A stretch of 34,217 nucleotides of DNA from Octopus bimaculoides. Lineage: Eukaryota. Of this stretch, positions 1-30,137 are shown in pieces. Where the stretch lies: the NCBI RefSeq assembly GCF_001194135.2, contig NC_068992.1, positions 51,721,622 through 51,755,838 on the forward strand. Reading direction: 5' to 3'. Both the position numbers and the translations under genes were made by a program. Below the pieces are notes generated by a model. That model had not been told where the DNA came from. It searched no databases and worked only from the letters and a program-made list of their open reading frames with translations. Within the stretch, counting starts at the first letter, position 1, and every line of letters starts with the position of its first letter.

Positions 1-29
1 TGTGAGTGTGTGTGTTTGTGTATGCGTAC

Positions 30-61
<32 letters not shown>

Positions 62-165
62 ATATATGTATATACATGTGTGTGTGTGAGTGTGTCTTGT
101 GTATGTATGTGCATATACATATGAGTGTGTGTGTATATATATAATGTACATACTCATACATACAT
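1..165. repeat. (TG)n/(TA)n compound microsatellite
   Basis: Directly visible dinucleotide runs. Confidence 0.95.
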
Positions 166-892
166 AAAAGAAACGTATGTGTGTAGTTATGTATCCTATG
201 CATTATTTGAGCTGAGAACAATGAAAAACCTCTGAACAAAATAAGCTGAGTAAATTGATATTTATATTAATATAAATATTGTCACATCCTCGTATATTTT
301 GCTTGTATGCTGCTGCACATATATCAGACAGCATTATTTTAGCTCTACTTTAGTTATACTCTGTATCTATTAAATATAAATATATCAAAATATACAGAAT
401 GACCTCAACGATGACAGATTAAGTTTGATTGCAGTGTCCCATGTGTTATTCTGGTCAAACAAACAAAATTTAGCTAATCAGATACTAGTAGTCTGTGAGC
501 CATTTTTGAGAGATGATGTAAAAATTATCTAACACTTGCTTCATTCACTCAGCACCAGACCAATAAGAGCTATGTTCTCAGTTGCTTTTCACAACTGACA
601 TCAAGGACGGAAACCCACAGAACATAATCAACCTTCTTTTAACTGCTTCCTTTCATGTAACATGATGAATTGAATGCTAAAGACATGGTGATCCCTATTG
701 TGATCAGTTTGGAACATGTTTTCTTCTCTCTCTCTTCTACTCTGCTGCTATGAGCTGCTAGCATGCAAGCATGCTAGCAGAAGATAACTATAACGTTCTC
801 ATATGCACATTTCTTTCTCAAGTTTTTTTTTTTTTTTTCAAACTAGGAAATGCAGATGTGAACCATTTTATCAGAAAGGACTAAAACTTAGC

Positions 893-938
893 ATGACAGA
901 AGCAGCAGTGTCTTGCAATCTATCACAAGAGGAAAAAA
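893..938 (+). CDS. Tentative first coding exon of an unidentified micro-exon gene (MTEAAVSCNLSQEEK, ends phase 1); exon probably starts at 847
   Basis: Strong acceptor T16-caaactag|G at 846/847, ATG at 893, donor AAA|gtaaca; phase fits the next candidate exon. No family recognised. Confidence 0.3.
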
Positions 939-1003
939 GTAACATTCTTTGCCTTGCCAAAGTAATAAGCATTTTCCTCAGTTGTATTTGAATAAGGAAG
1001 ACT

Positions 1004-1216
1004 ATACTCTTTACTCTTTAACTTGTTTCAGTCATTTGACTGTGGCCATGCTGGAGCACCGCCTTTAGTCGAGCAAATCGACCCCAGGACTTATTCTTTG
1101 TAAACCTAGTACTTATTCTATTGGTCTCTTTTGCCGAACGGCTAGGTTACGGGGATATAAACACACCAGCATTGGTTGTGAAGCGATGGTGGGGGGACAA
1201 ACACAGACACACAAAT

Positions 1217-1265
<49 letters not shown>

Positions 1266-1450
1266 CATATACATATACACATATATGACGGGCTTCTTTC
1301 AGTTTCCGTCTACCAAATCCACTCACAAGGCTTTGGTCGGCCCGAGGCTATAGTAGAAGACACTTGCCCAAGGTGTTGTGCAGTGGGACTGAATTCGGAA
1401 CCATGTGGTTAGTAAGCAAGCTACTTACCATACAGCCACTCCTGCGCCTA
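1004..1450 (-). mobile_element. tRNA-derived SINE, family A (tRNA-like head, conserved core, internal CA/TA microsatellite, tail ending gaaacaagtaaaagag), near full length
   Basis: Same modules recur at 1590, 6045, 9013, 9697 and elsewhere; the minus-strand head has A/B-box-like motifs and the core ccttgggcaagtgtcttct...gtgagtggatttggtagacggaaactgaaagaagcccgtc. Confidence 0.9.
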
Positions 1451-1589
1451 TTCATTATCCTTAAAACATCTAAGGTGCAAAAGCATATTGCATGTGATAT
1501 ACTTGCCCATAAACTATTCCCATGGTATTTGAGAAAGGGGACCACTCATTTGTAGTCACATTTGTGGCAAAATATGGACAGATATGTAT

Positions 1590-1970
1590 AAGAGCAGGTG
1601 TGATTGTGTAGTGAAAAGCTTGCTTCACAACCACATAGTTCCAGGTTCAGTCCCACTGTGTGGCACCTTGGGCAAGTGTCTTCTATTATAGCTTTGAGGC
1701 CACCAGAGCTTTGTGAGTGGATTTTGTAGTTGGTAACTGAAAGAATCATGTTGTGTGTGTGTGTGTGTTTGTCCCCCAGTACCACTTGATAACCAGTGCT
1801 GGTGTGTTTAAATCCCCATAACGTAGCAGTTCAGCAAAAGATACCAATAGAATTGGAACCAGGCTTTAAAAAATACATGTACTGGAGGTCAATTTATTTG
1901 AGTAAATGTCTTCATGGTGGTGCCCCAGCATGGCTTCAGTCTAATTAGTGAAACAAATATAAAATAAAAA
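1590..1970 (+). mobile_element. SINE family A, diverged full-length copy
   Basis: Colinear with the reverse complement of 1004-1450. Confidence 0.88.
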
Positions 1971-2052
1971 AATAGTTAGTGCTAATGTAATTTGTGTTGT
2001 TATTTGGTTAATATATGCTGCATTCTATTGTATCTTTCAGCTTTTGTAATTA

Positions 2053-2080
2053 AGAAAGAAAGAAAGAAAGAAAGAAAGAA
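2053..2080. repeat. (GAAA)n tetranucleotide repeat
   Basis: Directly visible. Confidence 0.9.
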
Positions 2081-2212
2081 TCATCCCCTTCATTTGACAT
2101 TTGATAGTTTCAGGCAAATTTCTTTTACATCATCTGTTACAACTCTATGTCACTGAGGTGTGTGCAGCATTGTGTGTTCTTGATATTTGTTTTTGTTGTT
2201 ATTGGAGAGTAC

Positions 2213-2268
2213 ATCATCATCGGTGTCGTCATCATCATCATCGTCGTCGTCATTGTCATCATCATCAT
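2213..2268. repeat. (CAT/CGT)n trinucleotide repeat
   Basis: Directly visible; explains the poly-His/Arg in ORF 2101-2310. Confidence 0.9.
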
Positions 2269-2782
2269 TTTGTTGCGCAGTATGGATATGAAATAACTAA
2301 CTTTTGTTGATTTTTTATCATTTTAACTGTCTAGCCTTAAGAAACAACTTAAGACAGAAAGTACCTTTCTAAGAATATAAGTTAATCAAAGGAGAGAAGA
2401 CTCTTGGAGTGCTCTCAATGTCTTCTTTGATATCCAATCATTTCAGACGGTAGAATAGTTTTTATTTTATTTTTAATTGAATTTCATGCTCCAGTGATAA
2501 CTGATACAACTTTCATTTTTGCTGTTGAAAGAACATACCCATATTCTTGATATTTTTACTATTATAGCAGTATATTTTGAGATTTTCTATTTATATTTCT
2601 GCCATGTGTTTGTCTGAAGAAACTTCAACATCTGTTACATGACATTCTCTTTTCTTTTCTTTCTTTTTTTTCTTACGTCATACATATTGTCTACTTGTCC
2701 AGTTGTTTTGTCTGTCTAAATATTAAAATCCCAGATTATTTGGTCTTCTAGGATTGTTAGAGCCTTGAAATATCATGTAAAA

Positions 2783-3116
2783 GCTAAAGACCCCCTTCAG
2801 TCATAAATGACCGTGGGATTGCAACCTAGAAATTACCCCCCACGGCATAAGCCTGGGCAAGGTTGTTTGTGAAAGAACAGCAGTTGCCCATGCATACCAG
2901 CCTTTCTGCTCCACACCCCTGATATTATTCAAAGGAAAGGCAAAGGCTGATACAGCTTGGCACCAGTGATGTTGCAACACATTTCTACAACTAAGTGAAT
3001 TGGAGCAACGTGAGAATAAAGTATCTTGCTCAAGAACACAACACACAGCCCAGTCCAAGAATTGATCTAAACCACCACATGATTCTGAGCTCAATGCTCT
3101 AACTGCTGAGCCATAT
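2783..3116 (-). mobile_element. tRNA-derived SINE, family E
   Basis: Minus strand begins atggctcagcagttagagcattgagctc (tRNA-like A box), then a B-box remnant and gtgttcttgagcaagatactt, a common SINE central motif. Confidence 0.75.
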
Positions 3117-3563
3117 GTCTTCATATATATATACATATAATTTTTCCTTTCCACAAACTACATGATACAAGTGAAGTTGGAAGAAAGATAAAAGAAAAAC
3201 GTTTTATTAAAATGTTCAAACCTGTTCTGAATGGAAATAACAACAATTATGTAACAACCAGTTAATGATGTGGGTTAAAAAATATCTTAAACATATGAAT
3301 AGAAACAAATTACAGAAGGTTGCCCCCCAACTGAAATAAAAATGATCAAAACCAACTAAGTTTTCTCACTCATAAAACCATTAAATCTAAACTGCAAGCT
3401 AATTGGTTAAAATAAATGTGGGATCTACGCCAATAAAACAGGTGGCTCCATCAAATCATAATGTTTAAGATGTATGCAGATTGGTCAAAACTGCATTCGA
3501 AAAATTTAGCATTTTGGAGCCTTCTAAGAGGTATAAAAAGGAAGAAGTCACTCATTTTAATAC

Positions 3564-3890
3564 AATAAGTACTGGATGAACACTGGCTGTTGATGTAATT
3601 GACTTTCTCTATCCCCATAAAGTGCTGGTCTTGTGCCAAAATCTGAAATCATTATGATTATTATCAAGATAGTGAATTACCAGTATCATTAGTATACCAC
3701 ACAAAATGCTTAGAGGCATTTCGTCTAGTTTTATACTTTTAAGCTCAAATTCCATTGAGGTTAACTTTGTCTTTTATCCTTTTAGGGTCGATAAATCAAG
3801 TACAAGTTGAACATTGTGGCGGATATAATTCACTAGCTCCCACCCCATAAATCTCAGGCTTTGTGCCTACAGTAGAAAAAAATTATTATT
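3564..3890 (+). mobile_element. Nin/Deu-domain-type tRNA SINE (family B): a 3' remnant followed by a full copy
   Basis: actttgtcttttatcctttttagggtcgataaatcaagtac matches the copies at 5752 and 8273 and the Nin-domain motif ctttcatcctttcggggtcgataaaataagtacc. Confidence 0.8.
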
Positions 3891-4051
3891 ATTGTTGACA
3901 TAGTTGCTTCATCAAAAGCACTGTTTTAACTCATATTTATATGTACACACCATATCATAAGCAAAAACATCAATTGATGCCTTCATTTCACTGCAGTTTG
4001 ATCTTGAAGAGTAAATATAAATACACCCAGGTATTTTGTTTTTCTTGCCAG

Positions 4052-4074
4052 AAAATGAAGAAGATGCTGCAAAT
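4052..4074 (+). CDS. Tentative micro-exon (23 nt, (K)NEEDAAN, phase 1 to 0)
   Basis: Acceptor tttttcttgccag, donor AAT|gtgagg; open frame, phase-compatible with both neighbours. Confidence 0.35.
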
Positions 4075-4655
4075 GTGAGGTGACAACCATATCAACTCTG
4101 CCAATTTATTTTCATGTCATAACAAAACAGTCTAAACAGACATTTTACAGGCGTACATAATGTAATTTATTTTATACATTTACACCATAACATAAATACA
4201 GATCGTATATGATAAGCTTGCAAGTATTTTCGTGTTAGTCAAGGAAATATGTGATTGTGTGTATGTGTGAGTATTGGAGTATGATTGAGTGAATGTGCTC
4301 CTGTGTTAGTGCCTTGAACGACATAGTCATTGTCTGTTTTGTGGTAATTTATATCAAATATATTTAATGAGTAGGTTTACACTACGTGGCAGAAGAGATA
4401 TTAAAGACAAGCTTGTCCTAAGATCTATTTGTAGACTTATAGATTACAATATAATATGCAACTCCAAATAATAAATGACCAAAGATCACACTCGCTAATA
4501 CTGTCGAAGCAATAGCAATAAAGTTATGTCTCAAAATGTAATTTATAACTTTCTGATTCCCAAACACTTTTTCATAGTATAGAAAGATATTACATTCTGA
4601 GGGTATCATAGTAAAAATCATATTTATGAGAATCATAATTATATAAATCTTTTAG

Positions 4656-4693
4656 GTTTCAACCAGTAACGGGCATCTCTGTCACATAGCTAA
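4656..4693 (+). CDS. Tentative micro-exon (38 nt, VSTSNGHLCHIA(K), phase 0 to 2)
   Basis: Acceptor aaatcttttag, donor TAA|gtaagt; only one frame is open and it fits the chain. Confidence 0.38.
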
Positions 4694-5446
4694 GTAAGTG
4701 CCCTGGGATTTCCACCTTTTCAAGATTATGAATGGTAAATATTTATAGAAATATAGCAGCTTCATATGGTTAAGAATGTGGGAATAGTTGTTCCATGAAG
4801 ATAATAGATTTTGTTAAGTTCAATAGGCACCATGACTGGTATGATAGATTTTCTGACAAAGAGGTCGAAATATGTCAATCAAGTAAGGTTGCTAATTATT
4901 GACACAGAAAAAGATGGTGTCTTAAGCCTTTTGATACCAACGTACTTCAGACTACCCCTGGTTCTATAACATAAACTGATCATTTTAAAGTGGTTTAAAT
5001 TATAATCTTCCATCAAAATTTTAGGCTGAATGTTTCCAGGCCCCATTAGAAAGTTATTTTACTATAGCATAAACTAACTGTCTATAACATAAACTTACCA
5101 TTTTTCTGGCAGCTTTTTTAATATTTCAGATGAATCCAAATTTCTATTTGGTTACAAGTTTATTGACATTAGATGTCTCATGAGCAATTTAATGGGTTAA
5201 TAAATGTAGAACATGCAGAAATAACACATCCTCAGCAAAAAAACTAAAAAATTTAGTCAACAAAATTGAAAGTACCAGTTCATTGCATTGAACGTCTACT
5301 TTTCCAAACCAAAAAGAAAATGGTGAATACAAACAAAGAAATAGTAGAAGTTCACAAAGTGAACTTGACCGAATGAGAAAAAGTATAGTGCAAAAACCTT
5401 CATACTTCATTGATTGATAATAGGTAAGTTCTCTCAAGTGTGACAG

Positions 5447-5478
5447 ATTTACTTTAGAGAATTATAGAAGTGCATCTT
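5447..5478 (+). CDS. Tentative micro-exon (32 nt, FTLENYRSAS(L), phase 2 to 1)
   Basis: Acceptor ctctcaagtgtgacag (modest), donor CTT|gtgagt; phase-compatible. Confidence 0.35.
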
Positions 5479-5751
5479 GTGAGTATTCATGATGAGTCAA
5501 AATCTCCTTTATAGTGACTAGCTTAGCCTTTTATTGAACAACTTTGTATTTGCATTGGCTGACTGAATATCTAAATCTGAGGAATGATTCTATACTTTAT
5601 TCTGTCATTGTACACTGGAGAATCACTCGTAGCTTTTAATTTATACTTGAAAGAAATTATAGAAAGAATCATAGGTTTCTGAAATTGACACAAGAGCACC
5701 ATCTACCCTAAAAAAAGTAAGTGTATAACTGGTTAAATCTAGTACTTAAAT

Positions 5752-6033: not shown

Positions 6034-6044
6034 ATCAAGTATTT

Positions 6045-6440
6045 TATTCTTTCATTCTTTTACTTGTTTCCGTCATTTGACTGTGACCATGCTGTAGCAG
6101 TACCTTAAGGGGTTTTAGATGAACAAATTAACCCCAGGACTTATTTTTTGTAAGCCTAGTACTTATTCTATCGGTCTCTTTTGCCGAACTGCTTAGTTAC
6201 AGGGACATAAACACACCAACACCGGTTGTCAAGTGTTGGTGACAAACACACACACACACACACACATATATATATGACAAGTTTCTTTCAGTTTCCTTCA
6301 ACTAAATCCACTCACAAGGCTTTGGTTGACCTGCAGCTATAGTAAAAGACACTTGCCCAAGGTGCCATGGAGTGGGACTGAACCCAGAGCCATGTGGTTG
6401 GGAAACAAGCTTCTTACCACACAACCACACCTGCGCCTGT
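6045..6440 (-). mobile_element. SINE family A, full length
   Basis: Colinear with 1004-1450 at high identity. Confidence 0.9.
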
Positions 6441-6956: not shown

Positions 6957-8272
6957 AAATTTTGATCATTCAATTAACTCTGCAACAACAGAGGGAGAAA
7001 AAATAAAAACATAAAAAAGATATTTATTTGTTTCTTATACTGAAATAAATAAAATGTCATAATTTTATCAGTAAATATATTCTGAAAAATGTCTCAAACA
7101 AACCAAAAAAAAAAAAAAAAAATTTTTTTAAAAAGAAAATATTGCAGTTGGTGTAAACCATGGATAAATGTTTTTAAAAAATAAAAAGTGAAGAATAAAA
7201 CTGACACACAATGTTAAGGTTTATCGTACATCGAACAATAACAATATTTCTATATTTCTATTTTTTGCCTGTGAAATAAGGAAATTATCATCCAAACTCC
7301 ATTAAGATGACAGGTATAAGTATATTAACAAGTAATAACATTCAAATAAAGGTAATATTAAACTCCAGACACCTATTACATCTGTATTTGCTTGCAACTG
7401 TGGTGAATCATCATCATCACTTAACGTCTGTTTTCCATGCTAGCACAGAGTATTAAAGTAAAATATAGATTTCTTCTGTTGTTCTAGAACATTTCTCCAT
7501 CTCTGCTGTGTATTCTGTTTAAATATGTATTACATTTTTTCTCTCATTATTGAAATTGCATAGCTTTGCCATTTTGAAATTGAATACTCTTATGCACAGC
7601 ACCCAAATATAATGGAATTTAAATTTTCTATATATTCACATATTTACTGTTAGTGGAATATTCCAATCATATCTATTTGAAGGAGAACTCTCTCAGAACC
7701 GAATAGTAGAATATATCTTCTTCGTTTATTCATTCAATAACCACTAGTTTATATGACTTAGTCATCTCTCATCAATTTCATTTGGTTCATCTGGAGATCT
7801 TTAACCTCATTTTACAATCTCTAATTATTTACTGCAGTTGAACAACATATTTTCATACAGAAATGAACTCCTCTGATTGGTGAATATTGAATAGCTGCCA
7901 AACAATGTTATTTCCTGTGTCATATTATTTGTAATGCTTTTGGTTAGTTACAGAACAACTATTAAGTAATACTCTGCAACTACTACATAGATCTGGAACT
8001 TCACAGTGTAGTAATGCCTAAATGTAACATGCCAATGGTGAAGGAAGTTGCCTCTTTAAATGCCAAAAGTTCGCTAAATCAAAGGTAACCTAGTGAGGCA
8101 TATGCTATTCTTTTTAATATGAGAAAACAAAGCTTTTTATACAATACAGATTAGTGTGCAATAACAGTTATTTCTAGTAAGGAGTGTGTACTTTAAAGAT
8201 ACGATTTTGCCAGTGTAGTTGATGAGGATGTTGTTTTGACTACATTACCAATGCCAGTACATTAGTGTTATT

Positions 8273-8490
8273 AAGGTAGTGAGCTGGCAGAAAAGTTAGT
8301 ATGGTGGGCAAAATGCTTAGCAGCTTTTTGTCCATCTTTATGTTCTGAGTTCAAATTCCGCTGAGGTCGACTTTGCCATTAATCCTTTCATGGTTGATAA
8401 ATTAAATACCAGTGAAACATTGGATCAATGTAATCGACTAACCCTTCCCCTCAAAATTTCAGGCCTTGTGCCTTTAATAGAAAGGTTTAT
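8273..8490 (+). mobile_element. SINE family B (Nin-domain type), full length
   Basis: Head gagctggcagaaaagttagt, B box gagttcaaattcc, core gtcgactttgcc...gataaaattaaataccag, tail aggccttgtgcctttaatagaaagg. Confidence 0.9.
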
Positions 8491-8544
8491 TTAAGCCAGC
8501 AAGCTGGCAGAATTGTTAGTATCCTCCTCCAGCTCCTCCTCCGC

Positions 8545-8722
8545 ATCATCTTCATTAGATGTCTGTTTTCCATGCTTGCATGGGTTGGATGATTTGACTG
8601 GGACTAGCTAAGTTGAAGATCTGCACCAGGCTCCAGTCATCTGTTCTGGCTTGGTTTCTATGCATGGATGCCCTTCCTAATACCAACCACTTTACAGAGT
8701 GTACTCGATGTTATTACATGTG
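8545..8722 (-). mobile_element. RTE-tailed SINE/LINE 3' end (family C), truncated
   Basis: ttttccatgcttgcatgggttggatgatttgact...ggatgcccttcctaataccaaccact matches 13110-13260. Confidence 0.85.
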
Positions 8723-8723
8723 A

Positions 8724-8927
8724 TCAGAGATGCACATATCATCAGCCACCAAGGGACATGCTCAACTGGTTAAGGTCAAACAACTGACAAGCAAATCTGT
8801 GGTATTAAGCAGAATATTTGCTGTAGCCCATCTTTTTATACCAAGACAAAACAATGTACATGATTACACTTCCAATCAATTAAGATCAGAAGCCATGAGA
8901 GCCACTGCCTGGCACTGCATCCAGGCA

Positions 8928-8930
<3 letters not shown>
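8724..8930. repeat. Unclassified interspersed repeat (family D)
   Basis: cagccaccaagggacatgctcaactggttaaggtcaaacaactgacaagcaaatctgtggtatt recurs at 12960-13040. Confidence 0.75.

Positions 8931-9012
<82 letters not shown>
8929..9012. repeat. (TAT)n(TAG)n compound microsatellite
   Basis: Directly visible. Confidence 0.95.
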
Positions 9013-9392
9013 CCATGGATGTGTTGTTGAGAAGCTGGTATCTTAACTATGTGGTCTTGCCTTCAGTTACACTCTACTGCACCTTGGCAAGTGTCCTCTA
9101 CTATAGCTCTGGACTGACCAAAGTCTTCTGAGTGCATTTGGTAGATGGAAACTAAAAGAATCCCAGTATATATGCGTGTTTTGTGTTTGCTCCCCACTAC
9201 CACTTGACAACCACTGTTGTTTCGTTTATGTTTCCATAACTTAGTGGTCCTTCAAAAGAGATGATAGAATAAGTACCTGACAAAATAAAATTTAAAAAAT
9301 AGTCGGGTCACTATTTTTGATTAAACACTTCAAAGTGGTACCCCATTATACTGCAGTCACATGACTGAAACATTTAAAAGATAAAAAGATTA
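9013..9392 (+). mobile_element. SINE family A, old diverged copy
   Basis: Core and tail motifs colinear with 1590-1970. Confidence 0.8.
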
Positions 9393-9696: not shown

Positions 9697-9980
9697 CTTT
9701 TATCTTTCATCTTGTTTCACTCATTAGATTGCGGTCATTTCGCCTCGAAGAATTTTTAGTCAAATGAATCAACCCAGTACTTATGTTTTTTTGAAGTCTG
9801 TTACATATTCTATTGGTTTATTTTGCCAAACCACTAAGTTATGCAGGTGGAAACAAGCCAACACCAGTGTCAAGACGTTGTGGAGGACATCCTCAGGCAC
9901 AAAACTCTCACACAGTGGGACTGGACTCAGAACCATGTGATTGGGAAGTAAATTTCTTACCACATAACCATACCTAATTA
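9697..9980 (-). mobile_element. SINE family A, internally deleted
   Basis: Tail (cttgtttcactcatt...ttgccaaaccactaagtt) joined to head (cagtgggactggactcagaaccatgtg). Confidence 0.75.
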
Positions 9981-10726
9981 CACTGTCTCCAATATTCGAT
10001 TAAAGCTTATTTTATCAATCACTGAATGATATTTTTTATTTTCTTGTCAAGAAAAGATGGCAGTGTCTATGATCCTTAACCTTCACAGGGCCTCTGAGAC
10101 TGATGAAAGAGACAGAGAGAGAGAGGTGTTCCCAAATCAGAGACCTTGGCCAAAGGTTTGCAACAGAATGAAATTTTCTAAAGCCAAACAGTCATTTGAT
10201 GGTGTTAAACTAAGCAATGGAGTATGTCTACCATTCAGCAAAGTCAAATTCAATTTAATATCAAATCAGAAAGCCATAACTAAAAGCAGCAAGATATTTT
10301 GTCTTCTGTTGCTCAACCAAAACAAGCATTCACTAATAATTTAAAATAGTGGTAATGTAATGATGTTTTGCATATTATTACTGACAATAATGAAATAGCA
10401 GGTAAAAGACAGGATGATGATGCTGTTGCTGTTTTGTTGATTGCTAGAAGTTACAAATGTTGTTTATAGAAATAGCAATATTGAGGAATTCGCAATGATG
10501 ACAGTAATAGTGGTGAGATTATGATGATGACAATAGTAGTGAGACTGTATGGAAGAATGATATTAGTTATAGTAATGTTAGTCACAATAGTTCTGGATAT
10601 AAATGAGCATAAGAGGCACATTAATACTAATGGCTAATTATTGTCATGACAAAGAAAATGTGCCGTAGGTATACATATGTGTGTGTATGCATCATCATTA
10701 TCACCATCATCAGCAACAACATTTAA

Positions 10727-11180
10727 TGGAAGACCCTATGTCTGGCAACAGGTCTCTGCACCATGCCACACAAGCAGGAGAACCCAATCATGGCGGCTGT
10801 CAGACAATTTCTGTGACCACATCACTACTAACATCTGTCCACTTAATCCCCTAGACTGCAAACCCCTTGATTATTATGTGTTGGTGCAGTTGAGTGAAGG
10901 ACCGACAAAACTTCTTATAATACCAAAGATGAACTGAAGGCAAGGATTATGGCATTATTCACCAACTTAAACAAGGAGACATCCAGAAGAGTTGCAGGCG
11001 ATTCTGAGGTCATCTGGAGGCTGTGGTTGAAGCCAATGGCGATTTTACTGAACAGATTTACTCTTTCATATTCCAAGATATTTTGTTGTAATTTTGGTAA
11101 ATATACCTGTTAAGACGAGATGTCAGTGTTATCTTCCTTTTTGCATAATTTGGATGACAATTTATTCACCACACCGTGTA
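10727..11180 (+). mobile_element. Tc1/mariner transposon relic, maT/DD37D-like: 3' half of transposase pseudogene, right TIR and TA
   Basis: Translates GRPYVWQQVSAPCHTSRRTQSW..DNFCDHITTNICPLNPLDCKPLDYYV (WQQDSAP-H...WPPNSPDLNPLDYY motif); after a frameshift KDELKARIMALFTNLNKE..HLEAVVEANGDF; ends ggatgacaatttattcaccacaccgtg|TA. Confidence 0.88.
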
Positions 11181-11631
11181 GGTATATTTGTGTGTGTATG
11201 TATTTGTGTGTGTGTGTGTGTGTGACTTATGTAAATGGCAAGTCTTTAGGTTCTCCATACTCTCTATGTTTCCAAAATCCTCATTCTAGTACGTTTTGGT
11301 ATTCCATTATAAAACTGAACTTACTGCCCTCCTCTTATTCTCATTTCTTGAGCAAGCTGTTAATATTATGCAAGAGATTATCTACATGTGTACATACATT
11401 TTAAATGAACTGATATCAAAAGACAATAAATTAGGTATTTCTTTAAAATATTCAACATCATGTTCACTCAACTTTGAGCTATGTTCTTGTGCAATTCTTT
11501 CTAATGAACAAAATTCCTGCTATATTTAAACATTAGAATGGCAAGCTAAAGAGAGTCTCTGATAATGTGTGTTTTAAAAAAGTAAATGTATAATATTTTT
11601 TCTGGCCAATTTTATTCTGTTTCTTTTTCAG

Positions 11632-11663
11632 TAACAACTTACCTTTTTAAACCTGAAGAACAG
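11632..11663 (+). CDS. Tentative micro-exon (32 nt, (L)TTYLFKPEEQ, phase 1 to 0)
   Basis: Very strong acceptor ttttattctgtttctttttcag, donor CAG|gtatca; the only open frame fits the chain. Confidence 0.42.
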
Positions 11664-11713
11664 GTATCACTATTTTAACAATCTACACTGAGAGAATCAC
11701 AGAAACTGTAGAT

Positions 11714-11928
11714 GAGGGGTCCCTGAAAAGTTCCTGGCTTTATGGGTATCACAAAAGGCCTGGTTAAAAGCCCAACCTTCCAAATTCTTTTACAGGGCTT
11801 AGAAAAACTGAAGGACCACTGCAATAAGTGTGTGAATCTGAGAGGGGGATATGCTGAATAAAATGATAATTACCTGATCCTCCTGTATTTTCTTTTACCC
11901 AAAGCCAGGAACTTTTCAGCACCACCTC
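11714..11928 (+). mobile_element. Mariner-derived non-autonomous element (MITE-like deletion derivative)
   Basis: TIRs gaggggtccctgaaaagttcctggcttt and aaagccaggaacttttcagcaccacctc; the interior encodes GLEKLKDHCNKCVNLRGGYAE*, like the mariner C-terminus KL..RW.KCV...GDY.E*. Confidence 0.85.
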
Positions 11929-12189
11929 CCACAGACAGCCAAGTGTTTAATTCATAAATATTCCCTGTCCTTAGTCTGTTTTGTGCTGTACTGTGTATCA
12001 CTCCATCCATGCCCATCACGTCTGTTTGATTTAGTGTCCTTTAACGATTTCTGTTCAAAAATGCTAGATTTTGATGTAACACAGCTTGCTAACCTCTACT
12101 TCATTTCTCATCATCTACCCTACCTTAGGACAAGCTGACTGGAACCTCATTTGAATAACAATAATTAGTTGGAAATTGGTTGATTCTGG

Positions 12190-12490
<301 letters not shown>

Positions 12491-12739
12491 CTTGATTCAT
12501 CCATATATATGTACTAACAGTAATACCTGTCGTTGATTGGCTCCTTACTTTTAAGCTTTCTTGGGAGACACATTCAAAGTGTTATTATATATATGTAATA
12601 TACTCCTCCTGTATGTGTGTATTTTATAAGGAAAAAAACAAAAGAAACAACAACGAACTTCTGTTTGTTTATTATGACAATAATAAGTGAGTTGTATGTA
12701 TTATTTTATATATCAATACAGTAATGGCAATTATATAAT

Positions 12740-12865
12740 TCACAAGGCTTTGGTCAGCACAGAACTGTTATGAAAGAGAATTGCCCAACATGCAACACAG
12801 TGGGACTGAACTCAAGGTGACATGGTTGGAAAGCAAGCTTCTCAACCACACAGTCACACCTATAA
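12740..12865 (-). mobile_element. SINE family A head fragment
   Basis: tcacaaggctttggtc...ttgcccaacatgc..cagtgggactgaactc. Confidence 0.8.
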
Positions 12866-12934
12866 AGGAGAGATACATTTTGAAGAATATACTCCTTGAT
12901 ACAATATGCTTAACAAAAAAAAGATGGGATGTTT

Positions 12935-13050
12935 ATCATGATCAAAGATGCCTATATTGTCAGCCACTAAGGGACATGCTCAAGTGGTTAAGATCAAGCA
13001 ACTGACATGCAAATCTGTGGTATTGAGCAGAATATTTGTTGTAATGATAT
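12935..13050. repeat. Family D repeat, second copy
   Basis: Aligns with 8724-8830. Confidence 0.75.
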
Positions 13051-13087
13051 TTCTATTGCAGCAACTCAGCACTGAATCCGTTTGAAA

Positions 13088-13385
13088 TCATCATCATCAT
13101 CATCATCATCGTTTAACGTCCACTTTCCATGCTAGCATGGGTTGGACGATTTGACTGAGGACTGGTGAAACCGGATGGCAACACCAGGCTCCAATCTAAT
13201 TGGCAGAGTTTCTACAGCTGGATGCCCTTCCTAACGCCTCAGAGAGTGTAGTGGGTGCTTTTACGTGTCACCCGCACGAAGGCCAGTCAGGCGGTACTGG
13301 CAACGGCCATGCTCATCTCGCTCGAGAAACCTCATGTGTCACCCGCACAAGAGCCAGTCCAGGGGCACCGGCAACGATCTCGCTC
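13088..13385 (-). mobile_element. RTE-tailed SINE (family C), young copy running into the gap
   Basis: (CAT)n tail then gtttaacgtccactttccatgctagcatgggttggacg; roughly 85-90% identical by eye to the reverse complement of 15545-15760. Confidence 0.9.
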
Positions 13386-14064
13386 NNNNNNNNNNNNNNN
13401 NNNNNNNNNNNNNNNNNNNNNNNNNNNNNNNNNNNNNNNNNNNNNNNNNNNNNNNNNNNNNNNNNNNNNNNNNNNNNNNNNNNNNNNNNNNNNNNNNNNN
13501 NNNNNNNNNNNNNNNNNNNNNNNNNNNNNNNNNNNNNNNNNNNNNNNNNNNNNNNNNNNNNNNNNNNNNNNNNNNNNNNNNNNNNNNNNNNNNNNNNNNN
13601 NNNNNNNNNNNNNNNNNNNNNNNNNNNNNNNNNNNNNNNNNNNNNNNNNNNNNNNNNNNNNNNNNNNNNNNNNNNNNNNNNNNNNNNNNNNNNNNNNNNN
13701 NNNNNNNNNNNNNNNNNNNNNNNNNNNNNNNNNNNNNNNNNNNNNNNNNNNNNNNNNNNNNNNNNNNNNNNNNNNNNNNNNNNNNNNNNNNNNNNNNNNN
13801 NNNNNNNNNNNNNNNNNNNNNNNNNNNNNNNNNNNNNNNNNNNNNNNNNNNNNNNNNNNNNNNNNNNNNNNNNNNNNNNNNNNNNNNNNNNNNNNNNNNN
13901 NNNNNNNNNNNNNNNNNNNNNNNNNNNNNNNNNNNNNNNNNNNNNNNNNNNNNNNNNNNNNNNNNNNNNNNNNNNNNNNNNNNNNNNNNNNNNNNNNNNN
14001 NNNNNNNNNNNNNNNNNNNNNNNNNNNNNNNNNNNNNNNNNNNNNNNNNNNNNNNNNNNNNNNN
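13386..14064. other. Assembly gap (679 N)
   Basis: N run. Confidence 0.99.
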
Positions 14065-14160
14065 AAAAAGAAAATGATGCAGTAATCATTCATACACATT
14101 TGTTTCTAAATTTAAACAATATTTTAGATTTATTTTCAAGTATTATATTGAAATTCACAG

Positions 14161-14199
14161 GAGAAGTATGTTTTGACAGTTCCCCATTTGACTGACAAG
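14161..14199 (+). CDS. Tentative micro-exon (39 nt, EKYVLTVPHLTDK, phase 0 to 0)
   Basis: Acceptor tgaaattcacag|G, strong donor AAG|gtatgc, open phase-0 frame continuing from 11663. Confidence 0.42.
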
Positions 14200-14732
14200 G
14201 TATGCACAGCTCATCTTAACAAGAACAAACATTGAGTACCTCTTACTATTATGATATAAAAATATCCTATCTTCAATGAAAATATTTAGTTTGGTTGATA
14301 GCTTTCAAATAAATCTTTCAGAAGAATTATTTAAAAAAAAAACAAAAAAAACAAAACAAGACAAAACAAAAGAAACACAATACAGTGTAGAAAAATATTT
14401 TCAATACTTACTGAAACATTACTGTCAGAAAGATGTGTCAGCATCTTTTCAGAAAATAAAAGATGAAAAAAAAAAAAAAAGAAAGAGAGAAAAAGGTTAT
14501 TCTCTTCACCTCATCACTCACTTCTGTTTAGATTATTTATATTGTGTGTGTATAATACAGCTACTGTTTCCGTCATCACTCCGGGCTTATTATCATATTC
14601 TAATGTGCAGATGTTTTTGTTCACATAAATCTTTTTAAAACTACAGACACAAAAATGGACCTTAATCTTCTTCAAATTTAGGATGAGGTTTTTGAACTAG
14701 GGCAGCTGAAATGTACTAGGGAACACTTTATA

Positions 14733-14820
14733 TAAGACGAGATGTCAGTGTTATCTTCCTTTTTGCATAATTTGGATGACAATTTATTCACCACACCGTG
14801 TATGTATATTTGTGTGTGTA

Positions 14821-14856
<36 letters not shown>

Positions 14857-14901
14857 ACTTATGTAAATGGCAAGTCTTTAGGTTCTCCTTACTCTCGATG
14901 T
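14733..14901 (+). repeat. Local duplicate of 11111-11269 (mariner right end, TA, TG microsatellite and unique flank)
   Basis: Near-identical: taagacgagatgtcagtgttatcttcc...caccacaccgtgta...gacttatgtaaatggcaagtctttaggttctcc. Confidence 0.93.
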
Positions 14902-14960
14902 GTGTTTATCACATGCTAATAAATATGCTAATAAATATATAATCTTTGTTTACAAACTAG

Positions 14961-15010
14961 GGTACTTTCTTTGTGGTACATCAGGAAGCACGATCTTTAG
15001 TCAGATTCTG
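14961..15010 (+). CDS. Very tentative exon (50 nt, GTFFVVHQEARSLVRF, phase 0 to 2)
   Basis: Acceptor tttgtttacaaactag|G, weak donor CTG|gtacct; open frame. Confidence 0.25.
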
Positions 15011-15086
15011 GTACCTATTTTAGAATTGAAGAAATATGATATTATCCGCTTAATAAATCACAACTCTGTGAAGACCTTCAGCTAGC

Positions 15087-15772
15087 GAAGACCTTCGGCT
15101 TGCAAAGACCTGTTGGGGCAAGCAAAAGCGAAATCGAGATGGCACTTGTACCAGTGTGGCATGTAAATAGCACCAGCGTGATAGTTACCAATGTAGCCTC
15201 CCTGGCACTTGTGCCAGTGGCATGTGAAAAGACATTCGAGCAAGATCGTTCATCGCCTTCCTGGCACTTGTGCCCATGGCACATGTAAAGACATTTGAGC
15301 AAGATCGTTCGTCGCCTTCCTGGTACTTGTGCCCGTGACACGTGAAAAGACATTCAAGCAAGATCGTTGCCAATGCCGATGGGCTGGCCCCTATGCAGGC
15401 GACACGTAAAATACACCTTTTCGCGCGTGGCTGTTGATCGTTACCAACGTCGCCTCCCTGGCACGTGAAAAGACATTCGAGCGAGATCATTGCCAGTACT
15501 GCTGGACTGGCTCCTGTGCAGGTGGCACGTAAAGTACACAATTTTGAGTGTGGCCGTTGCCAGTACCGCCTGACTGGCCTTCGTGCCGGTGGCACGTAAA
15601 AGCACCCCCTACACTCTCGGAGTGGTTGGCATTAGGAAGGGCATCCAGCCGTAGAAACTCTGCCAAATCAGATTAGAGCCTGGTGTAGCCACCTGGTTCA
15701 CTAGTCCTCAGTCAAATCGTCCAACCCATGCTAGCATGTAACGGTGACGTTAAACGATGATGATGATGGTGA
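15087..15772 (+). mobile_element. RTE-tailed SINE (family C) with an expanded internal tandem array
   Basis: Repeated units cctggcacttgtgcc.gtggca(c/t)gtgaaaagacattcgagcaagatcgtt, then the conserved 3' body and ccaacccatgctagcatg...gttaaacgatgatgatgatg tail. Confidence 0.9.
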
Positions 15773-17107
15773 AGCAAAATGTGAAATAGAAGCAGGTTAC
15801 TTGTTGTGTATTAACAAAATGACCCTATTAATGTACATCAATCACAACACACAATTTCACATGAAGAAATCGCGCAAATCAAATACAATAATAAAAGAAA
15901 TTATAACAATTTTCTGTTATATTTTATAATTATGTCACAGGATATCACACAATACTGGTTAATATTCTTTAATGAACTACCTAAAGGCTACTTAAATTAT
16001 TTCCTTTTCTTAGTATCCCGTCCAATTAAAAAACAGTCACATACAGAGCAACTGATTTTAAGGATTGCTATTAAATAATATTGACTGTGCAGTGTGTACT
16101 GCCAGCAGAAACATACTTCACTGCCGTAAAACAGAAATGGCACACCTTAAATACAAAATAAAAGGAAAGTAGCTAATTGAAAGAGTCATCTATAAGTCAC
16201 CATAGTTGGGTTTCTCAGCCATTTAGCTATGTCATTTATTATAGTACTACATTCATATCAGTTGATAATAGAGTTTCTAAAGCCATGTGCCTGTATGAAA
16301 TCAATCAGTTTCTCAGGAAATTTACAACAAAGAATTACCTCGTTATTAGATTTAGATATTGGTCTGTTATAATGCCGCATCACTTTTGAAGTATACCTCT
16401 TTTGATTTTTGGCTTATGTGGAATGTTAAACACACTGATACAAAAATGAAGTTCAAAGTCTTGGTGGTCGGAACTTATAACAGGACCTCAAAATATTTAA
16501 TGCAGTTGCACCATGGAGAAATCACAAAGGGAGAATGACTGAAGTAGTTGATGTTCCCCACTGTTTGACAAAATTATCTTCGATTACATTAAAATTCCAT
16601 TACAGATTAACAGCATGACATTCTCTTTATCCTTGAAATCCTTCCAGCTATGCCTCATCATATAAAACGAACCCATCATTATTGATTTCTTTTCCTTCTC
16701 CATCCAATAACAACACAAGATTAGACAAACATCTTTTTATTGGCATACCAATGTATATGCTACTTCTGATGAAGTTTAAATTCAATTTAAAATTCATAGA
16801 TAACCAAACTATTTAAGCTTCTCATAATGCCTTCTTGAAAATATACCTGCTGTAATTTATTTACAAATGTTTCTTGTCATTTTGGCTTTAATTATTTCTT
16901 CAATGCTTTAACCACACAATCTTACCAAACTTTTGAAATAAGTCTTTACTGCTGCTCCCATAACTTAAACACTCCCATTACCGTAGGTTTTATTTGGATC
17001 TGTTCTTATTTCTAATATATATTTACACATTGACTTTGATTTGATGGTCGTGTAAAATTCAATAAGCAATAATTTATATTATGTGTACATATATATATAT
17101 ATATATA

Positions 17108-17713
17108 NNNNNNNNNNNNNNNNNNNNNNNNNNNNNNNNNNNNNNNNNNNNNNNNNNNNNNNNNNNNNNNNNNNNNNNNNNNNNNNNNNNNNNNNNNNNN
17201 NNNNNNNNNNNNNNNNNNNNNNNNNNNNNNNNNNNNNNNNNNNNNNNNNNNNNNNNNNNNNNNNNNNNNNNNNNNNNNNNNNNNNNNNNNNNNNNNNNNN
17301 NNNNNNNNNNNNNNNNNNNNNNNNNNNNNNNNNNNNNNNNNNNNNNNNNNNNNNNNNNNNNNNNNNNNNNNNNNNNNNNNNNNNNNNNNNNNNNNNNNNN
17401 NNNNNNNNNNNNNNNNNNNNNNNNNNNNNNNNNNNNNNNNNNNNNNNNNNNNNNNNNNNNNNNNNNNNNNNNNNNNNNNNNNNNNNNNNNNNNNNNNNNN
17501 NNNNNNNNNNNNNNNNNNNNNNNNNNNNNNNNNNNNNNNNNNNNNNNNNNNNNNNNNNNNNNNNNNNNNNNNNNNNNNNNNNNNNNNNNNNNNNNNNNNN
17601 NNNNNNNNNNNNNNNNNNNNNNNNNNNNNNNNNNNNNNNNNNNNNNNNNNNNNNNNNNNNNNNNNNNNNNNNNNNNNNNNNNNNNNNNNNNNNNNNNNNN
17701 NNNNNNNNNNNNN
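17108..17713. other. Assembly gap (606 N), left edge at a (TA)n repeat
   Basis: N run. Confidence 0.99.
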
Positions 17714-17784
17714 CGAGTATTAAACTAATACACCTTTTTGTTGTTTATACACTTGCTTTCTGTTTTTTATTTTGGTAAATTCCA

Positions 17785-29095: not shown

Positions 29096-29340
29096 CTCTA
29101 AAACATCATCGCTCTGTTTGTTCATTTATTTGCTTTACATCTATTTGTCCATGCTAGCATGAGTTAGATGAATATATTATTGAACCAGTGTTTCGCATCT
29201 GGATGCCCTTCCTGTAACTAGGTCATTACTTTTTTATTTTTGAGTAAGCCAATTCTTATTTTACACATAGCCAAAGATATGAAGTGAGTGATTTTCATAA
29301 AGCACAAAATGTAAATAAACACATCAACATATATATGTAT

Positions 29341-30076
29341 AGGGCTTTCCTATAAGTAGGTTATCTCCCTTGGCTAGGCGGCGCTCCATGTAGATAATTA
29401 AACTTCCGGAGGCTAACCCACGCCATTGTTATTGTTTTACATTTTATCATGGATATAAAGCAGCTTGATAATTCAGCTATCGAAGTACTTACTGTGCCTG
29501 AGCTAAAGAGATATTTAAGATTATATGGACAGTATGTTACTGGAAGAAAGGCGGACTTGATTGAAAGGTTGAAAGGTATAAAAATTCTGTCGATGAAGAA
29601 TGTCAACAAAGTAAATTCATCGGACGATAAGTCTGAAGTATCGGACGATACTTCAGACAGGAATAAGCAGAAGCTTATATCTCCTCTCGGTGAAGTATTG
29701 CCTGATCTAAAGATCTTTGTAAGTTGCCGAATTTCACAGATAATGACATAATTACCTCGTGCTACGGATGAAAGCAAAGCAAAGCAACAATTAAGGAGTG
29801 GCATATTTTACCACGACAGACACGTACACAACATCGAATACCACGATATGAGTGAAAGCTGCTCTCACTGTATTGTCCGGTGTCTGGTAATCCCTTCGAT
29901 ACCGACATCAAACCCCAAAAAAGAATCCTAACCACAGAGTTTGGGTAATTATGTCAAATGTCACTGGCAATGTGCATTCAGCTGATTGCAACTGTTAAAG
30001 CAAGTCCCTGAGCATGCGTACATGTCATACGGGAGAGTTCCAATCAGGGGTGGATAACACCTTATAGGAAAGCCCT
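29341..30076 (+). mobile_element. 736-bp TIR DNA transposon deletion derivative, probably ISL2EU/PHIS-type
   Basis: Perfect 16-bp TIR AGGGCTTTCCTATAAG (29341-29356) and CTTATAGGAAAGCCCT (30061-30076), with an imperfect extension (gttatc..ccc); AT (or TA) duplicated on both sides; internal SAP+SWIM pseudogene. The element is certain; the superfamily is inferred. Confidence 0.88.
29449..29998 (+). pseudogene. SAP-domain plus SWIM-type zinc-finger protein, frameshifted and truncated (transposon accessory gene)
   Basis: LTVPELKRYLRLYGQYVTGRKADLIERL is a canonical SAP helix-extension-helix; after small indels it reads LPNFTDNDI/NYLVLRMKAKQQLRSGIFYHDRHV...IVRCLVIPS.../HRVWVIMSNVTGNVHSADCNC, the start of the SWIM CxC motif. 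Confidence 0.85.
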
Positions 30077-30137
30077 ATACACAAATATGATTATTATGAT
30101 TACTCCATTACTGCTGCCGTCACTGCCATCACCTTAA

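What the first reader, a model, noticed from the sequence alone, without database searches (positions are those of the whole stretch)
29341..30076. Miniature TIR transposon that kept its SAP-SWIM accessory gene and lost its transposase
Seen: perfect 16-bp TIRs and a 2-bp AT/TA target duplication enclose a promoter-length leader, an ATG at 29449, a full SAP DNA-binding domain and a linker. The reconstructable continuation ends exactly at the SWIM CxC (HSADCNC), where the deletion joins it to about 80 bp of right end. Established: SAP/SWIM domains occur in transposon-borne proteins; ISL2EU (PHIS group) elements carry a second ORF with a YqaJ exonuclease and are described with AT TSDs; Zisupton also has SAP and SWIM. 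Inference: a non-autonomous ISL2EU-like derivative. It still has an open 100-codon SAP-only frame that could be expressed as a DNA-binding mini-protein, a candidate for dominant-negative regulation or domestication. This is the most distinctive object in the window.
Basis: partly seen in the sequence, partly recalled or inferred. Interest (0 to 1): 0.72.

Follow-up and report, generated by a model that had tools for sequence, protein, structure and literature searches.

The report
Decayed miniature ISL2EU transposon in octopus
This is a 736-bp internally deleted copy of an ISL2EU-type cut-and-paste transposon in an octopus genome, keeping only a broken first exon of the accessory (SAP-SWIM-YqaJ) gene; it is an ordinary transposon fossil, not a new kind of element.

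Summary
Window 29341-30076 (736 bp) has perfect 16-bp terminal inverted repeats (TIRs) flanked by AT on both sides. It holds a 108-nt leader and a 100-codon ORF with a Pfam SAP domain above cut-off.

Relatives confirm the deletion model:
- A full-length relative (L001) shows that 29341-29994 is the left end plus exon 1 of a SAP-SWIM-YqaJ ("SSY") gene. The window copy breaks 11 nt before the exon 1 splice donor.
- Window 29994-30079 matches (92%) the transposase-side end of an Octopus bimaculoides copy (L010), 126 nt upstream of a THAP start codon.
- In O. bimaculoides (L002) and in six near-identical 6.5-kb Mya arenaria copies, the SSY gene lies convergent with a DDE_Tnp_4 transposase gene (pseudogene in L002; THAP-HTH_Tnp_4-DDE_Tnp_4 in Mya). 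The Mya copies carry AT target-site duplications (TSDs). This is the published ISL2EU definition.

The "kept accessory gene" claim is overstated. Exon 1 carries four frameshifting indels. The last 14 codons of the ORF are out of frame, and the first shift is shared by other copies. SAP and dead parts diverge equally (2.7% vs 2.6-3.1%). RNA evidence was unavailable. Low interest.

The parts
29339..29340 (.). Left copy of the AT target-site duplication
   Evidence: The same AT precedes the termini in L002, L010 and the Mya copies.
29341..29356 (+). Left TIR, AGGGCTTTCCTATAAG (16 bp, perfect)
   Evidence: Homologous to the L002 left end (1 mismatch), to the L001 start and to the Mya TIR TGTCCTTTCCGATAAC.
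29357..29448 (+). Left subterminal region and leader of the SSY gene. It contains the imperfect extension of the TIR (small palindrome TATAAG-TAG-GTTATC at 29351-29365) and the conserved ACTTCCG motif at 29402-29408.
   Evidence: The motif is present 60-85 nt from every terminus examined in 4 element lineages.
29449..29751 (+). 100-codon ORF. Codons 1-86 are the ancestral N-terminus of the SSY protein (SAP domain = residues 13-42 = 29485-29574, plus linker). Codons 87-100 (LKIFVSCRISQIMT) are out of frame. The stop is TAA at 29749-29751.
29449..29994 (+). Relic of SSY exon 1 (SAP, linker, and the first half of the SWIM signature up to CxC), 73% nucleotide identity to the intact exon in L001.
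29631..29658 (.). Perfect 13-bp palindrome (GTCTGAAGTATCG-GA-CGATACTTCAGAC). It corresponds to a 15-nt in-frame insertion relative to L001 and L002 and is specific to this mini subfamily.
29701..29712 (+). Site of the 25-nt deletion (between 29706 and 29707). This is the first frameshift and is shared with copies P0001, P0009 and P0010.
29745..29756 (+). Site of the 4-nt deletion (29749|29750), which also creates the TAA that ends the ORF.
29770..29788 (+). 5-nt insertion (AAGCA-type duplication) inside GAAAGCAAAGCAAAGCAAC.
29913..29923 (+). 1-nt insertion in the C/A run, shifting the frame before ...NPNHRVWVIMSNVTGNVHSADCNC.
29994..29995 (.). Internal-deletion junction. The left parent continues ...GCAACTG|CACTGCAGgtaag (11 nt before the exon 1 donor). 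The right parent reads ...CGGAAG|TTAAAGC. There is one nucleotide of microhomology.
29995..30060 (-). Right subterminal region, the outer part of the transposase-gene leader. The right-hand ACTTCCG motif is cut away by the deletion.
   Evidence: 92% identity over 87 bp to L010 8280-8194.
30061..30076 (-). Right TIR, CTTATAGGAAAGCCCT.
30077..30078 (.). Right copy of the AT target-site duplication.

Best explanation
Window 29341-30076 is one copy of a family of non-autonomous, internally deleted ISL2EU transposons (PHIS / Harbinger-like group) in an octopus genome. Its closest protein matches are all from Octopus bimaculoides.

The parent was a two-gene element several kb long (a Mya arenaria relative is 6.5 kb). 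At the left end a SAP-SWIM-YqaJ ('SSY') gene reads inward. At the right end a THAP-HTH-DDE_Tnp_4 transposase gene reads inward. Each gene starts about 90-125 nt from a 16-bp TIR.

A single internal deletion joined position -11 of SSY exon 1 to a point 82 bp from the right terminus. This removed the rest of the SSY gene, the intergenic region and the whole transposase gene.

The resulting mini-element, which already carried a frameshift in exon 1, was mobilised in trans by transposase from full-length copies and spread to many sites. This copy inserted at an AT dinucleotide in AT-rich non-coding DNA and duplicated it.

Shown: anatomy, homology of both ends, gene content of full-length relatives, AT flanks, and shared junction and frameshift among copies.

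Inferred: trans-mobilisation by the DDE transposase binding the TIR and subterminal palindrome; a staggered 2-nt cut; and that the 100-codon SAP ORF is a neutral relic rather than a working gene.
For: 1. Perfect 16-bp TIRs with AT on both flanks.

2. The left 654 bp is 73% identical to L001. There the same terminus is followed by SAP...CNCTAG, a GT-AG intron, then the rest of the SWIM signature (QGEACNH) and a YqaJ domain (Pfam).

3. The right 82 bp is 92% identical to the terminus of the O. bimaculoides locus L010. That terminus lies 126 nt upstream of an ATG opening a THAP domain (31.7 bits) and is followed by a DDE_Tnp_4 segment.

4. The O. bimaculoides locus L002 has AT|AGGGCTTTCCGATAAG, SSY remnants and a convergent DDE_Tnp_4 pseudogene, 49-61% identical to the Mya transposase.

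5. Six Mya arenaria loci carry a 6483-bp element at 99.9% identity. It has a 581-aa SSY gene and a convergent 521-aa THAP + HTH_Tnp_4 + DDE_Tnp_4 gene, the TIR TGTCCTTTCCGATAAC, and AT on both sides in 5 of 6 copies.

6. Han et al. 2015 define ISL2EU by exactly these features: AT TSD, a DDE/HTH/THAP ORF and a YqaJ ORF, animals only. They also list short non-autonomous families such as the 746-bp ISL2EU-2_PXyl.

7. At least 7 O. bimaculoides gene models end at the junction-created ...HSADCNC stop. P0002 reads across the same junction and right TIR into a different flank that begins with AT. P0001, P0009 and P0010 share the out-of-frame tail LKIFVSCRISQIMT. The deletion and the first frameshift therefore predate amplification.

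8. Amino-acid divergence from the family consensus is 2.7% in the SAP part and 2.6-3.1% in the dead part.
Against: - No intact autonomous octopus copy was seen. L002 and L010 are both broken, and only fragmentary O. bimaculoides YqaJ and DDE gene models turned up. Present-day mobility is therefore unproven.
- Only three octopus termini could be inspected, and no empty site. The AT TSD for octopus rests on one complete copy, two half-sites, one back-translated flank, and homology with Mya and L009.
- The transposase was not placed on a tree with reference ISL2EU, Harbinger and Spy sequences.
- The octopus TIR begins AGGG rather than the 'usually GG' of the paper, and the bases flanking the AT are T..A rather than A..T.
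- The neutrality test uses annotated protein models, which are biased against copies with stops, and has no synonymous-site information.
Confidence: 0.9

Rival explanations
1. The SAP-only ORF is a working gene. It would be transcribed from the retained left-end promoter and make a 100-aa SAP DNA-binding protein. That protein would regulate the transposon family as a KP-like repressor or competitor of the SSY protein, or would have been co-opted by the host.
For: - The ORF is open for 100 codons and the SAP domain scores above the Pfam cut-off.
- The leader keeps the ACTTCCG motif that is conserved upstream of both genes in all relatives.
- Several copies keep the same 100-aa ORF (P0009 and P0010).
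Against: - The last 14 codons are out-of-frame junk created by a 25-nt deletion.
- The downstream exon sequence carries three more frameshifts.
- Amino-acid change per site is no lower in the SAP part than in the untranslatable part.
- The copies are only about 3% diverged at the amino-acid level, so an open short ORF is expected by age alone.
- There are no expression data.
- It is a dispersed multi-copy sequence, not a single conserved locus.
Confidence: 0.05
2. This copy inserted as a full-length element and suffered its internal deletion in place, so it never moved as a mini-element.
For: Internal deletions of DNA transposons commonly arise by abortive gap repair. The junction has 1-nt microhomology.
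Against: The same junction (a stop immediately after ...HSADCNC, or read-through into ...KSLSMRTCHTGEFQSG...) occurs in at least 8 other O. bimaculoides gene models. One of them has a different flank.
Confidence: 0.03
3. It belongs to another SWIM-bearing transposon superfamily (Zisupton/KDZ, or MULE-type), not ISL2EU.
Against: - The flanks show a 2-bp AT repeat, not an 8-bp one.
- Both ends are homologous to ends that adjoin THAP / DDE_Tnp_4 and YqaJ genes.
- No KDZ-type or MULE-type transposase was found in any related locus.
Confidence: 0.01

Closest known systems
ISL2EU group of the PHIS (PIF/Harbinger-ISL2EU-Spy) superfamily, e.g. the Crassostrea gigas families ISL2EU-1..4_CGig (= ISL2EU-8/-10/-11/-15_CGi) (Han et al. 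2015, PMC4482050)
   Same: AT TSD. Short TIRs (16 bp here; 6-259 bp published). Full-length relatives have a THAP + HTH_Tnp_4 + DDE_Tnp_4 transposase of about 520 aa and a second YqaJ-domain ORF of about 500-600 aa. Animal (mollusc) host.
   Different: The window copy is a 736-bp deletion derivative with no transposase. The TIR starts AGGG rather than GG, and the bases next to the AT are T/A rather than A/T. The SAP and SWIM modules at the N-terminus of the YqaJ protein are not mentioned in the papers read here. No octopus or cephalopod ISL2EU is mentioned in the searchable literature.
Short non-autonomous ISL2EU families, e.g. ISL2EU-2_PXyl (746 bp, 13-bp TIR, AT TSD) and ISL2EU-CTel (1287 bp) (Table S2 of PMC4482050)
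   Same: Same size class, same TSD, no transposase, multi-copy.
   Different: Those are listed without recognisable ORF domains. This family retains an identifiable, though broken, exon 1 of the accessory gene.
mPing/Ping of rice (PIF/Harbinger deletion-derivative MITE); from my own knowledge, not tested here
   Same: A miniature element made by one internal deletion of a two-gene PHIS-superfamily transposon and mobilised in trans.
   Different: mPing has a 3-bp TWA TSD and a Myb-like accessory ORF in the parent, and shows very high recent activity.
KP element of the Drosophila P element (internal-deletion derivative encoding a DNA-binding-domain-only repressor); from my own knowledge
   Different: KP encodes the transposase's own THAP domain and its repressor function is shown experimentally. 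Here the module comes from the accessory protein, the ORF tail is frameshifted, and no function or expression is shown.
Zisupton / KDZ superfamily
   Different: Those have an 8-bp TSD and a different transposase. Neither is found here.

Membership tests
ISL2EU (PHIS superfamily) | 2-bp 5'-AT-3' target-site duplication | tested here: met
   AT at 29339-40 and 30077-78. AT before the termini of L002 and L010. AT on both sides in 5 of 6 Mya copies, and a single AT between abutting ends in L004 and L009. No empty site was available.
ISL2EU (PHIS superfamily) | Terminal inverted repeats (6-259 bp), usually starting GG | tested here: inconclusive
   Perfect 16-bp TIR. It starts AGGG, so GG is at positions 2-3, not 1-2. 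The Mya relative starts TGTCC.
ISL2EU (PHIS superfamily) | Autonomous relatives encode a DDE (DDE_Tnp_4) transposase with HTH and N-terminal THAP | tested here: met
   The Mya 521-aa gene has THAP / HTH_Tnp_4 / DDE_Tnp_4. Octopus L010 has THAP (31.7 bits) 126 nt from a terminus 92% identical to the window's right end, followed by DDE_Tnp_4. L002 has a DDE_Tnp_4 pseudogene next to the SSY gene.
ISL2EU (PHIS superfamily) | Second ORF with a YqaJ exonuclease domain | tested here: met
   L001 spliced protein: YqaJ 71.8 bits. P0042 63.7 bits and P0019 67.0 bits. The window sequence is homologous to exon 1 of this gene.
ISL2EU (PHIS superfamily) | Transposase falls in the ISL2EU clade, separate from PIF/Harbinger, Spy, Pangu and Nuwa, in a DDE-domain tree | not tested
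ISL2EU (PHIS superfamily) | Animal host | tested here: met
   All close protein matches are from Octopus bimaculoides. Full-length homologues occur in many molluscs.
MITE / non-autonomous deletion derivative | Short (<1 kb), TIRs and TSD present, no transposase, ends homologous to those of an autonomous element | tested here: met
   736 bp. Both ends match full-length or longer relatives. No DDE match in the window.
MITE / non-autonomous deletion derivative | Multiple dispersed copies sharing the same deletion junction | tested here: met
   At least 8 O. bimaculoides gene models carry the junction. A genome-wide copy number was not obtainable with these tools.
Zisupton / KDZ | 8-bp TSD and a KDZ-type transposase in full-length copies | tested here: not met
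   The flanks share only AT. The partner transposase is THAP / DDE_Tnp_4.
Functional or domesticated SAP mini-gene | Intact ancestral frame and fewer amino-acid changes than neutral sequence | tested here: not met
   Frame lost after codon 86. 2.7% change in the SAP part versus 2.6-3.1% in the dead part. This is a weak test based on protein models only.
Functional or domesticated SAP mini-gene | Transcription and translation of 29449-29751 | not testable with these tools

The most novel reading that the evidence does not exclude
The mini-family's retained left-end promoter could still drive a short transcript whose 100-aa product (SAP domain, acidic linker, junk tail) binds DNA. It would interfere with the full-length SAP-SWIM-YqaJ protein or with transposition complexes. 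That would make it a KP-like self-repressor built from the accessory protein rather than from the transposase.
Probability: 0.04. Interest if true: 0.55.

Novelty: new member of a known kind. Interest (0 to 1): 0.2.

Why it matters
Mainly for annotation. The many short 'SAP domain-containing protein' entries of Octopus bimaculoides in UniProt (A0A0L8IGG2, A0A0L8HXV9 and others) are relic exon-1 ORFs of a miniature ISL2EU family, not host genes.

Three smaller points:
- The work documents ISL2EU in a cephalopod.
- It shows that the ISL2EU accessory protein has a SAP-SWIM-YqaJ architecture with an invariant CxCx7CxH signature.
- It points to apparently intact, nearly identical two-gene copies in Mya arenaria. 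These would be good material for finally testing what the YqaJ protein does in transposition, which Han et al. 2015 say is unknown.

Tried and rejected
I did not try another route.
- DNA of other mini copies: exact-protein look-ups of the window ORF, P0009, P0017 and P0002 found nothing on record. TSDs of other copies could therefore not be tabulated directly.
- An exact scan of JGI metagenome contigs with the 21-nt deletion junction found nothing.
- 4-bp TATA TSD with a 15-bp TIR starting GGG: rejected, because the homologous Mya ends do not show any 4-bp direct repeat while AT fits 5 of 6 copies. The end-to-end junctions in L004 and L009 also contain only AT.
- Zisupton/KDZ: rejected (see the membership test).
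- A second 'mini' subfamily (P0008, P0011, P0012, ending CNCTAGKEHV): this may only be exon 1 read into intron 1 of longer copies with a mutated splice donor, so I draw no conclusion from it.
- Pfam SWIM: below cut-off even on a full-length homologue (P0019: 17.5 bits against 19.6). The SWIM assignment therefore rests on the invariant CxCx7CxH pattern and on UniProt's 'SWIM-type' naming.
- Antisense 147-aa ORF 29361-29804 and eight other window ORFs: no Pfam match. Rfam: no match in the window.

Full report
**What is in the sequence**

Window 29341-30076 is a 736-bp unit (41% GC, in a region of about 34% GC). It is bounded by AGGGCTTTCCTATAAG (29341-29356) and its exact reverse complement (30061-30076). 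The 15-nt core of this repeat, searched at up to two mismatches, occurs only at these two places in the 34-kb window, against 0.05 matches expected by chance. AT lies immediately outside both ends (29339-40 and 30077-78).

Inside the unit, a 108-nt leader precedes an ATG at 29449. It opens a 100-codon ORF ending at TAA 29749-51. Residues 13-42 match Pfam SAP at 30.6 bits, above the 23.9-bit cut-off.

**Host and family**

The read-through peptide found 16 proteins, all from Octopus bimaculoides and all short (100-278 aa). The best is 89% identical, and two 100-aa entries are 95-96% identical. The window is therefore octopus DNA, from O. bimaculoides or a close relative. It has N gaps, microsatellites and SINE-like repeats that recur in two O. 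bimaculoides loci.

At least seven of these models end at ...HSADCNC followed by a stop. P0002 reads through the same point into ...KSLSMRTCHTGEFQSGVVNTLKESPIVT. That is the window's right end including the TIR, followed by codons that must begin with AT and then differ from the window's flank. So the deletion junction is shared by dispersed copies: this is a family, not a one-off.

**The parent element**

1. Left end. P0004 lies on a 1990-bp Logan contig (L001). Its first bases, AGCACTTTCCGATAAGG..., align with the window's left terminus. Its exon 1 (SAP...HSADCNCTAG) ends at a GT donor. After a 246-nt intron the frame continues QGEACNHIGALLHAL... into a YqaJ domain (Pfam YqaJ 71.8 bits, Viral_alk_exo 62.2, SAP 24.2).

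2. Homologues. Using exon 2 as a query found 589 homologues. Among them are 565-614-aa SAP + YqaJ proteins in many bivalves and gastropods, and fragments in O. bimaculoides. In an alignment of 13 of them, C183, C185, C193 and H195 (CxCx7CxH) are invariant. Pfam SWIM itself is just below cut-off (17.5 against 19.6 bits). The window copy stops at the second cysteine.

3. Mya arenaria. Six loci carry a 6483-bp element at 99.9% mutual identity.
 - The 581-aa SAP-SWIM-YqaJ gene starts 87 nt from the left end.
 - A convergent 521-aa THAP + HTH_Tnp_4 + DDE_Tnp_4 gene starts about 120 nt from the right end.
 - The TIR is TGTCCTTTCCGATAAC, with AT on both flanks in five of six copies.

4. O. bimaculoides, locus L002 (chromosome CM046608.1). 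It has AT|AGGGCTTTCCGATAAG, SSY remnants, and a convergent DDE_Tnp_4 pseudogene 49-61% identical to the Mya transposase. The pseudogene carries stops and abuts a retrotransposon-type reverse-transcriptase ORF at 15988-16995, which probably truncates it.

5. O. bimaculoides, locus L010 (chromosome CM046603.1). It has AT|AGGGGGTTCCGATGAGG..., an ATG 126 nt inside the terminus opening a THAP domain (31.7 bits), and then a DDE_Tnp_4 segment. Window 29994-30079 matches this terminus at 92% over 87 bp.

The window element is therefore the left end plus SSY exon 1, joined to the last 82 bp of the transposase-side end. The junction is at 29994|29995. The left parent continues ...GCAACTG|CACTGCAGgtaag. 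The right parent reads ...CGGAAG|TTAAAGC. One G is shared.

**Classification**

Han et al. 2015 (PMC4482050) define ISL2EU by four features:
- an AT TSD (target A|AT|T);
- one ORF with DDE, HTH and THAP;
- a second ORF with YqaJ;
- TIRs of 6-259 bp, in animals only.

Their Table S2 includes oyster families and short non-autonomous families, for example ISL2EU-2_PXyl at 746 bp. All features that could be tested are met here. The exact terminus and the AT (rather than TA or TATA) TSD follow from homology with the Mya, L001 and L009 ends. A DDE-domain tree with reference sequences was not made.

**State of the 'kept' gene**

Aligned to the intact exon, the window copy differs as follows:
- a 15-nt in-frame insertion that forms a perfect 13-bp palindrome (29631-29658);
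- a 25-nt deletion at 29706|29707;
- a 4-nt deletion at 29749|29750, which creates the TAA;
- a 5-nt insertion near 29771-29775;
- a 1-nt insertion in the run at 29913-29923.

Only codons 1-86 of the ORF are ancestral. LKIFVSCRISQIMT is out of frame, because the ancestral sequence reads ...LPDPNVLKSDWTKDLCKLPNFTDNDVYNYLVLRMKAKRQLRSG.... The same junk tail is present in P0001, P0009 and P0010, so the template that amplified was already dead.

I compared each copy with the family consensus. In the SAP part, 21 of 769 residues differ (2.7%). In the part that cannot be translated from the ATG, 16-20 of about 630 residues differ (2.6-3.1%). There is no sign of extra constraint. The test is weak, because it uses annotated models only and has no synonymous sites. 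The low divergence implies a fairly young family, which by itself explains why a 100-codon ORF is still open.

**Mechanism (inferred)**

The element would be cut and pasted by a THAP-HTH-DDE_Tnp_4 transposase supplied in trans. The transposase would recognise the 16-bp TIR and the adjoining small palindrome, (T/G)ATAAs-N3-4-sTTATC, which is conserved at nt 11-27 of every end examined. It would insert at AT with a 2-nt stagger.

No intact octopus source copy was seen in the very small sample available. Only fragmentary O. bimaculoides DDE and YqaJ gene models exist in the protein collection. The family may now be immobile in this genome.

The left leader keeps an ACTTCCG motif (29402-29408). 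This motif lies 60-85 nt from each end, and 25-45 nt before each start codon, in all relatives. It is a plausible promoter element. The right-hand copy was removed by the deletion.

**Surroundings**

No Pfam-detectable ORFs were found among nine tested ORFs, including the 147-aa antisense ORF. There are no Rfam hits and only microsatellites nearby. The insertion site reconstructs to ...ATATATGT-AT-ACACAAATATG..., a partly palindromic AT-rich stretch. Whether it lies in an intron cannot be told.

**Verdict**

The functional speculation is unsupported. This is a new member of a known kind (ISL2EU non-autonomous derivative), of low general interest.

Noticed in passing
L009 8190-8260 (junction at 8226-8227); repeat 1-5597 = 11237-16831: ENA contig ctg186080_4.87x_c repeats itself with a period of 11,236 bp at 99.96% identity, so it is circular or tandem. 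In it the two ends of an ISL2EU element abut as TIR|AT|TIR. The SSY gene and the THAP/DDE gene diverge from the junction, and reverse-transcriptase (LINE-like) genes lie on the far side. It could be a tandem array or an extrachromosomal circle.
   Followed up: partly
L004 9913-22559 (junction near 16396): Two full Mya arenaria ISL2EU copies lie head-to-tail and share a single AT (GGACA-AT-TGTCC). The element end plus its TSD may recreate the preferred target, which would favour insertion next to an existing copy.
   Followed up: partly
L003-L008 about 9914-16397: The Mya arenaria ISL2EU copies are 99.9% identical over 6483 bp on five different chromosomes, and both genes are called full-length in several copies. 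This looks like a recently active autonomous element and would suit functional tests of the YqaJ accessory protein.
   Followed up: partly
window 29402-29408; L010 8278-8284; L001 about 63-69; both ends of the L009 and Mya elements: ACTTCCG (ETS-like core), often followed by N3-GACTA, is conserved 60-85 nt from every terminus and 25-45 nt upstream of both genes' start codons in four element lineages. It is a likely shared promoter element or protein-binding site.
   Followed up: partly
window 29351-29365 and 30053-30066; homologous positions in L001, L002, L009, L010 and Mya: Each terminus contains a small internal palindrome, (G/T)ATAAs-N3-4-sTTAT(C), directly after the CTTTCC core. It is conserved across octopus, Mya and the L009 element.
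   Followed up: no
window 29631-29658: Perfect 13-bp palindrome with a 2-nt spacer, created by a 15-nt in-frame insertion (SEVSD) that is absent from L001 and L002 but present in the other mini copies. It looks like a template-switch or hairpin-repair footprint.
   Followed up: partly
L002 12967-13126 and 15988-16995: The O. bimaculoides long copy carries a nested 160-bp palindromic MITE-like insertion inside its SAP exon. A 335-aa ORF with retroviral-type reverse-transcriptase motifs (judged by eye, not scanned) lies directly beyond the end of the transposase homology.
   Followed up: no
L010 4194-20534: The truncated O. bimaculoides ISL2EU copy (terminus, THAP and part of DDE; annotated as LOC106877736) lies inside the span of a BTB-domain gene, presumably in an intron. 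The 177-aa 'gene' is a transposase fragment.
   Followed up: no
window 29323-29356 / 30061-30094: The inverted repeat extends at 88% identity for 18 nt beyond the TIRs into the flanks, because the AT-rich target itself is partly palindromic (ACATATATATGTAT / ATACACAAATATGAT).
   Followed up: no
window about 13386-14060 and about 17108-17715; 1005-1974, 6043-6429, 8261-8943, 9080-9386: There are two runs of N (assembly gaps). Several SINE-like repeats are 70-80% identical to segments of L002 and L010. The window has no Rfam match, and the nine ORFs scanned have no Pfam match.
   Followed up: partly
UniProt entries behind P0001-P0016 (O. bimaculoides 'SAP domain-containing protein'): These annotated proteins are gene-model artefacts built on copies of this transposon family. 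Several are spliced around frameshifts, and P0014 and P0016 are chimeras with neighbouring sequence.
   Followed up: partly
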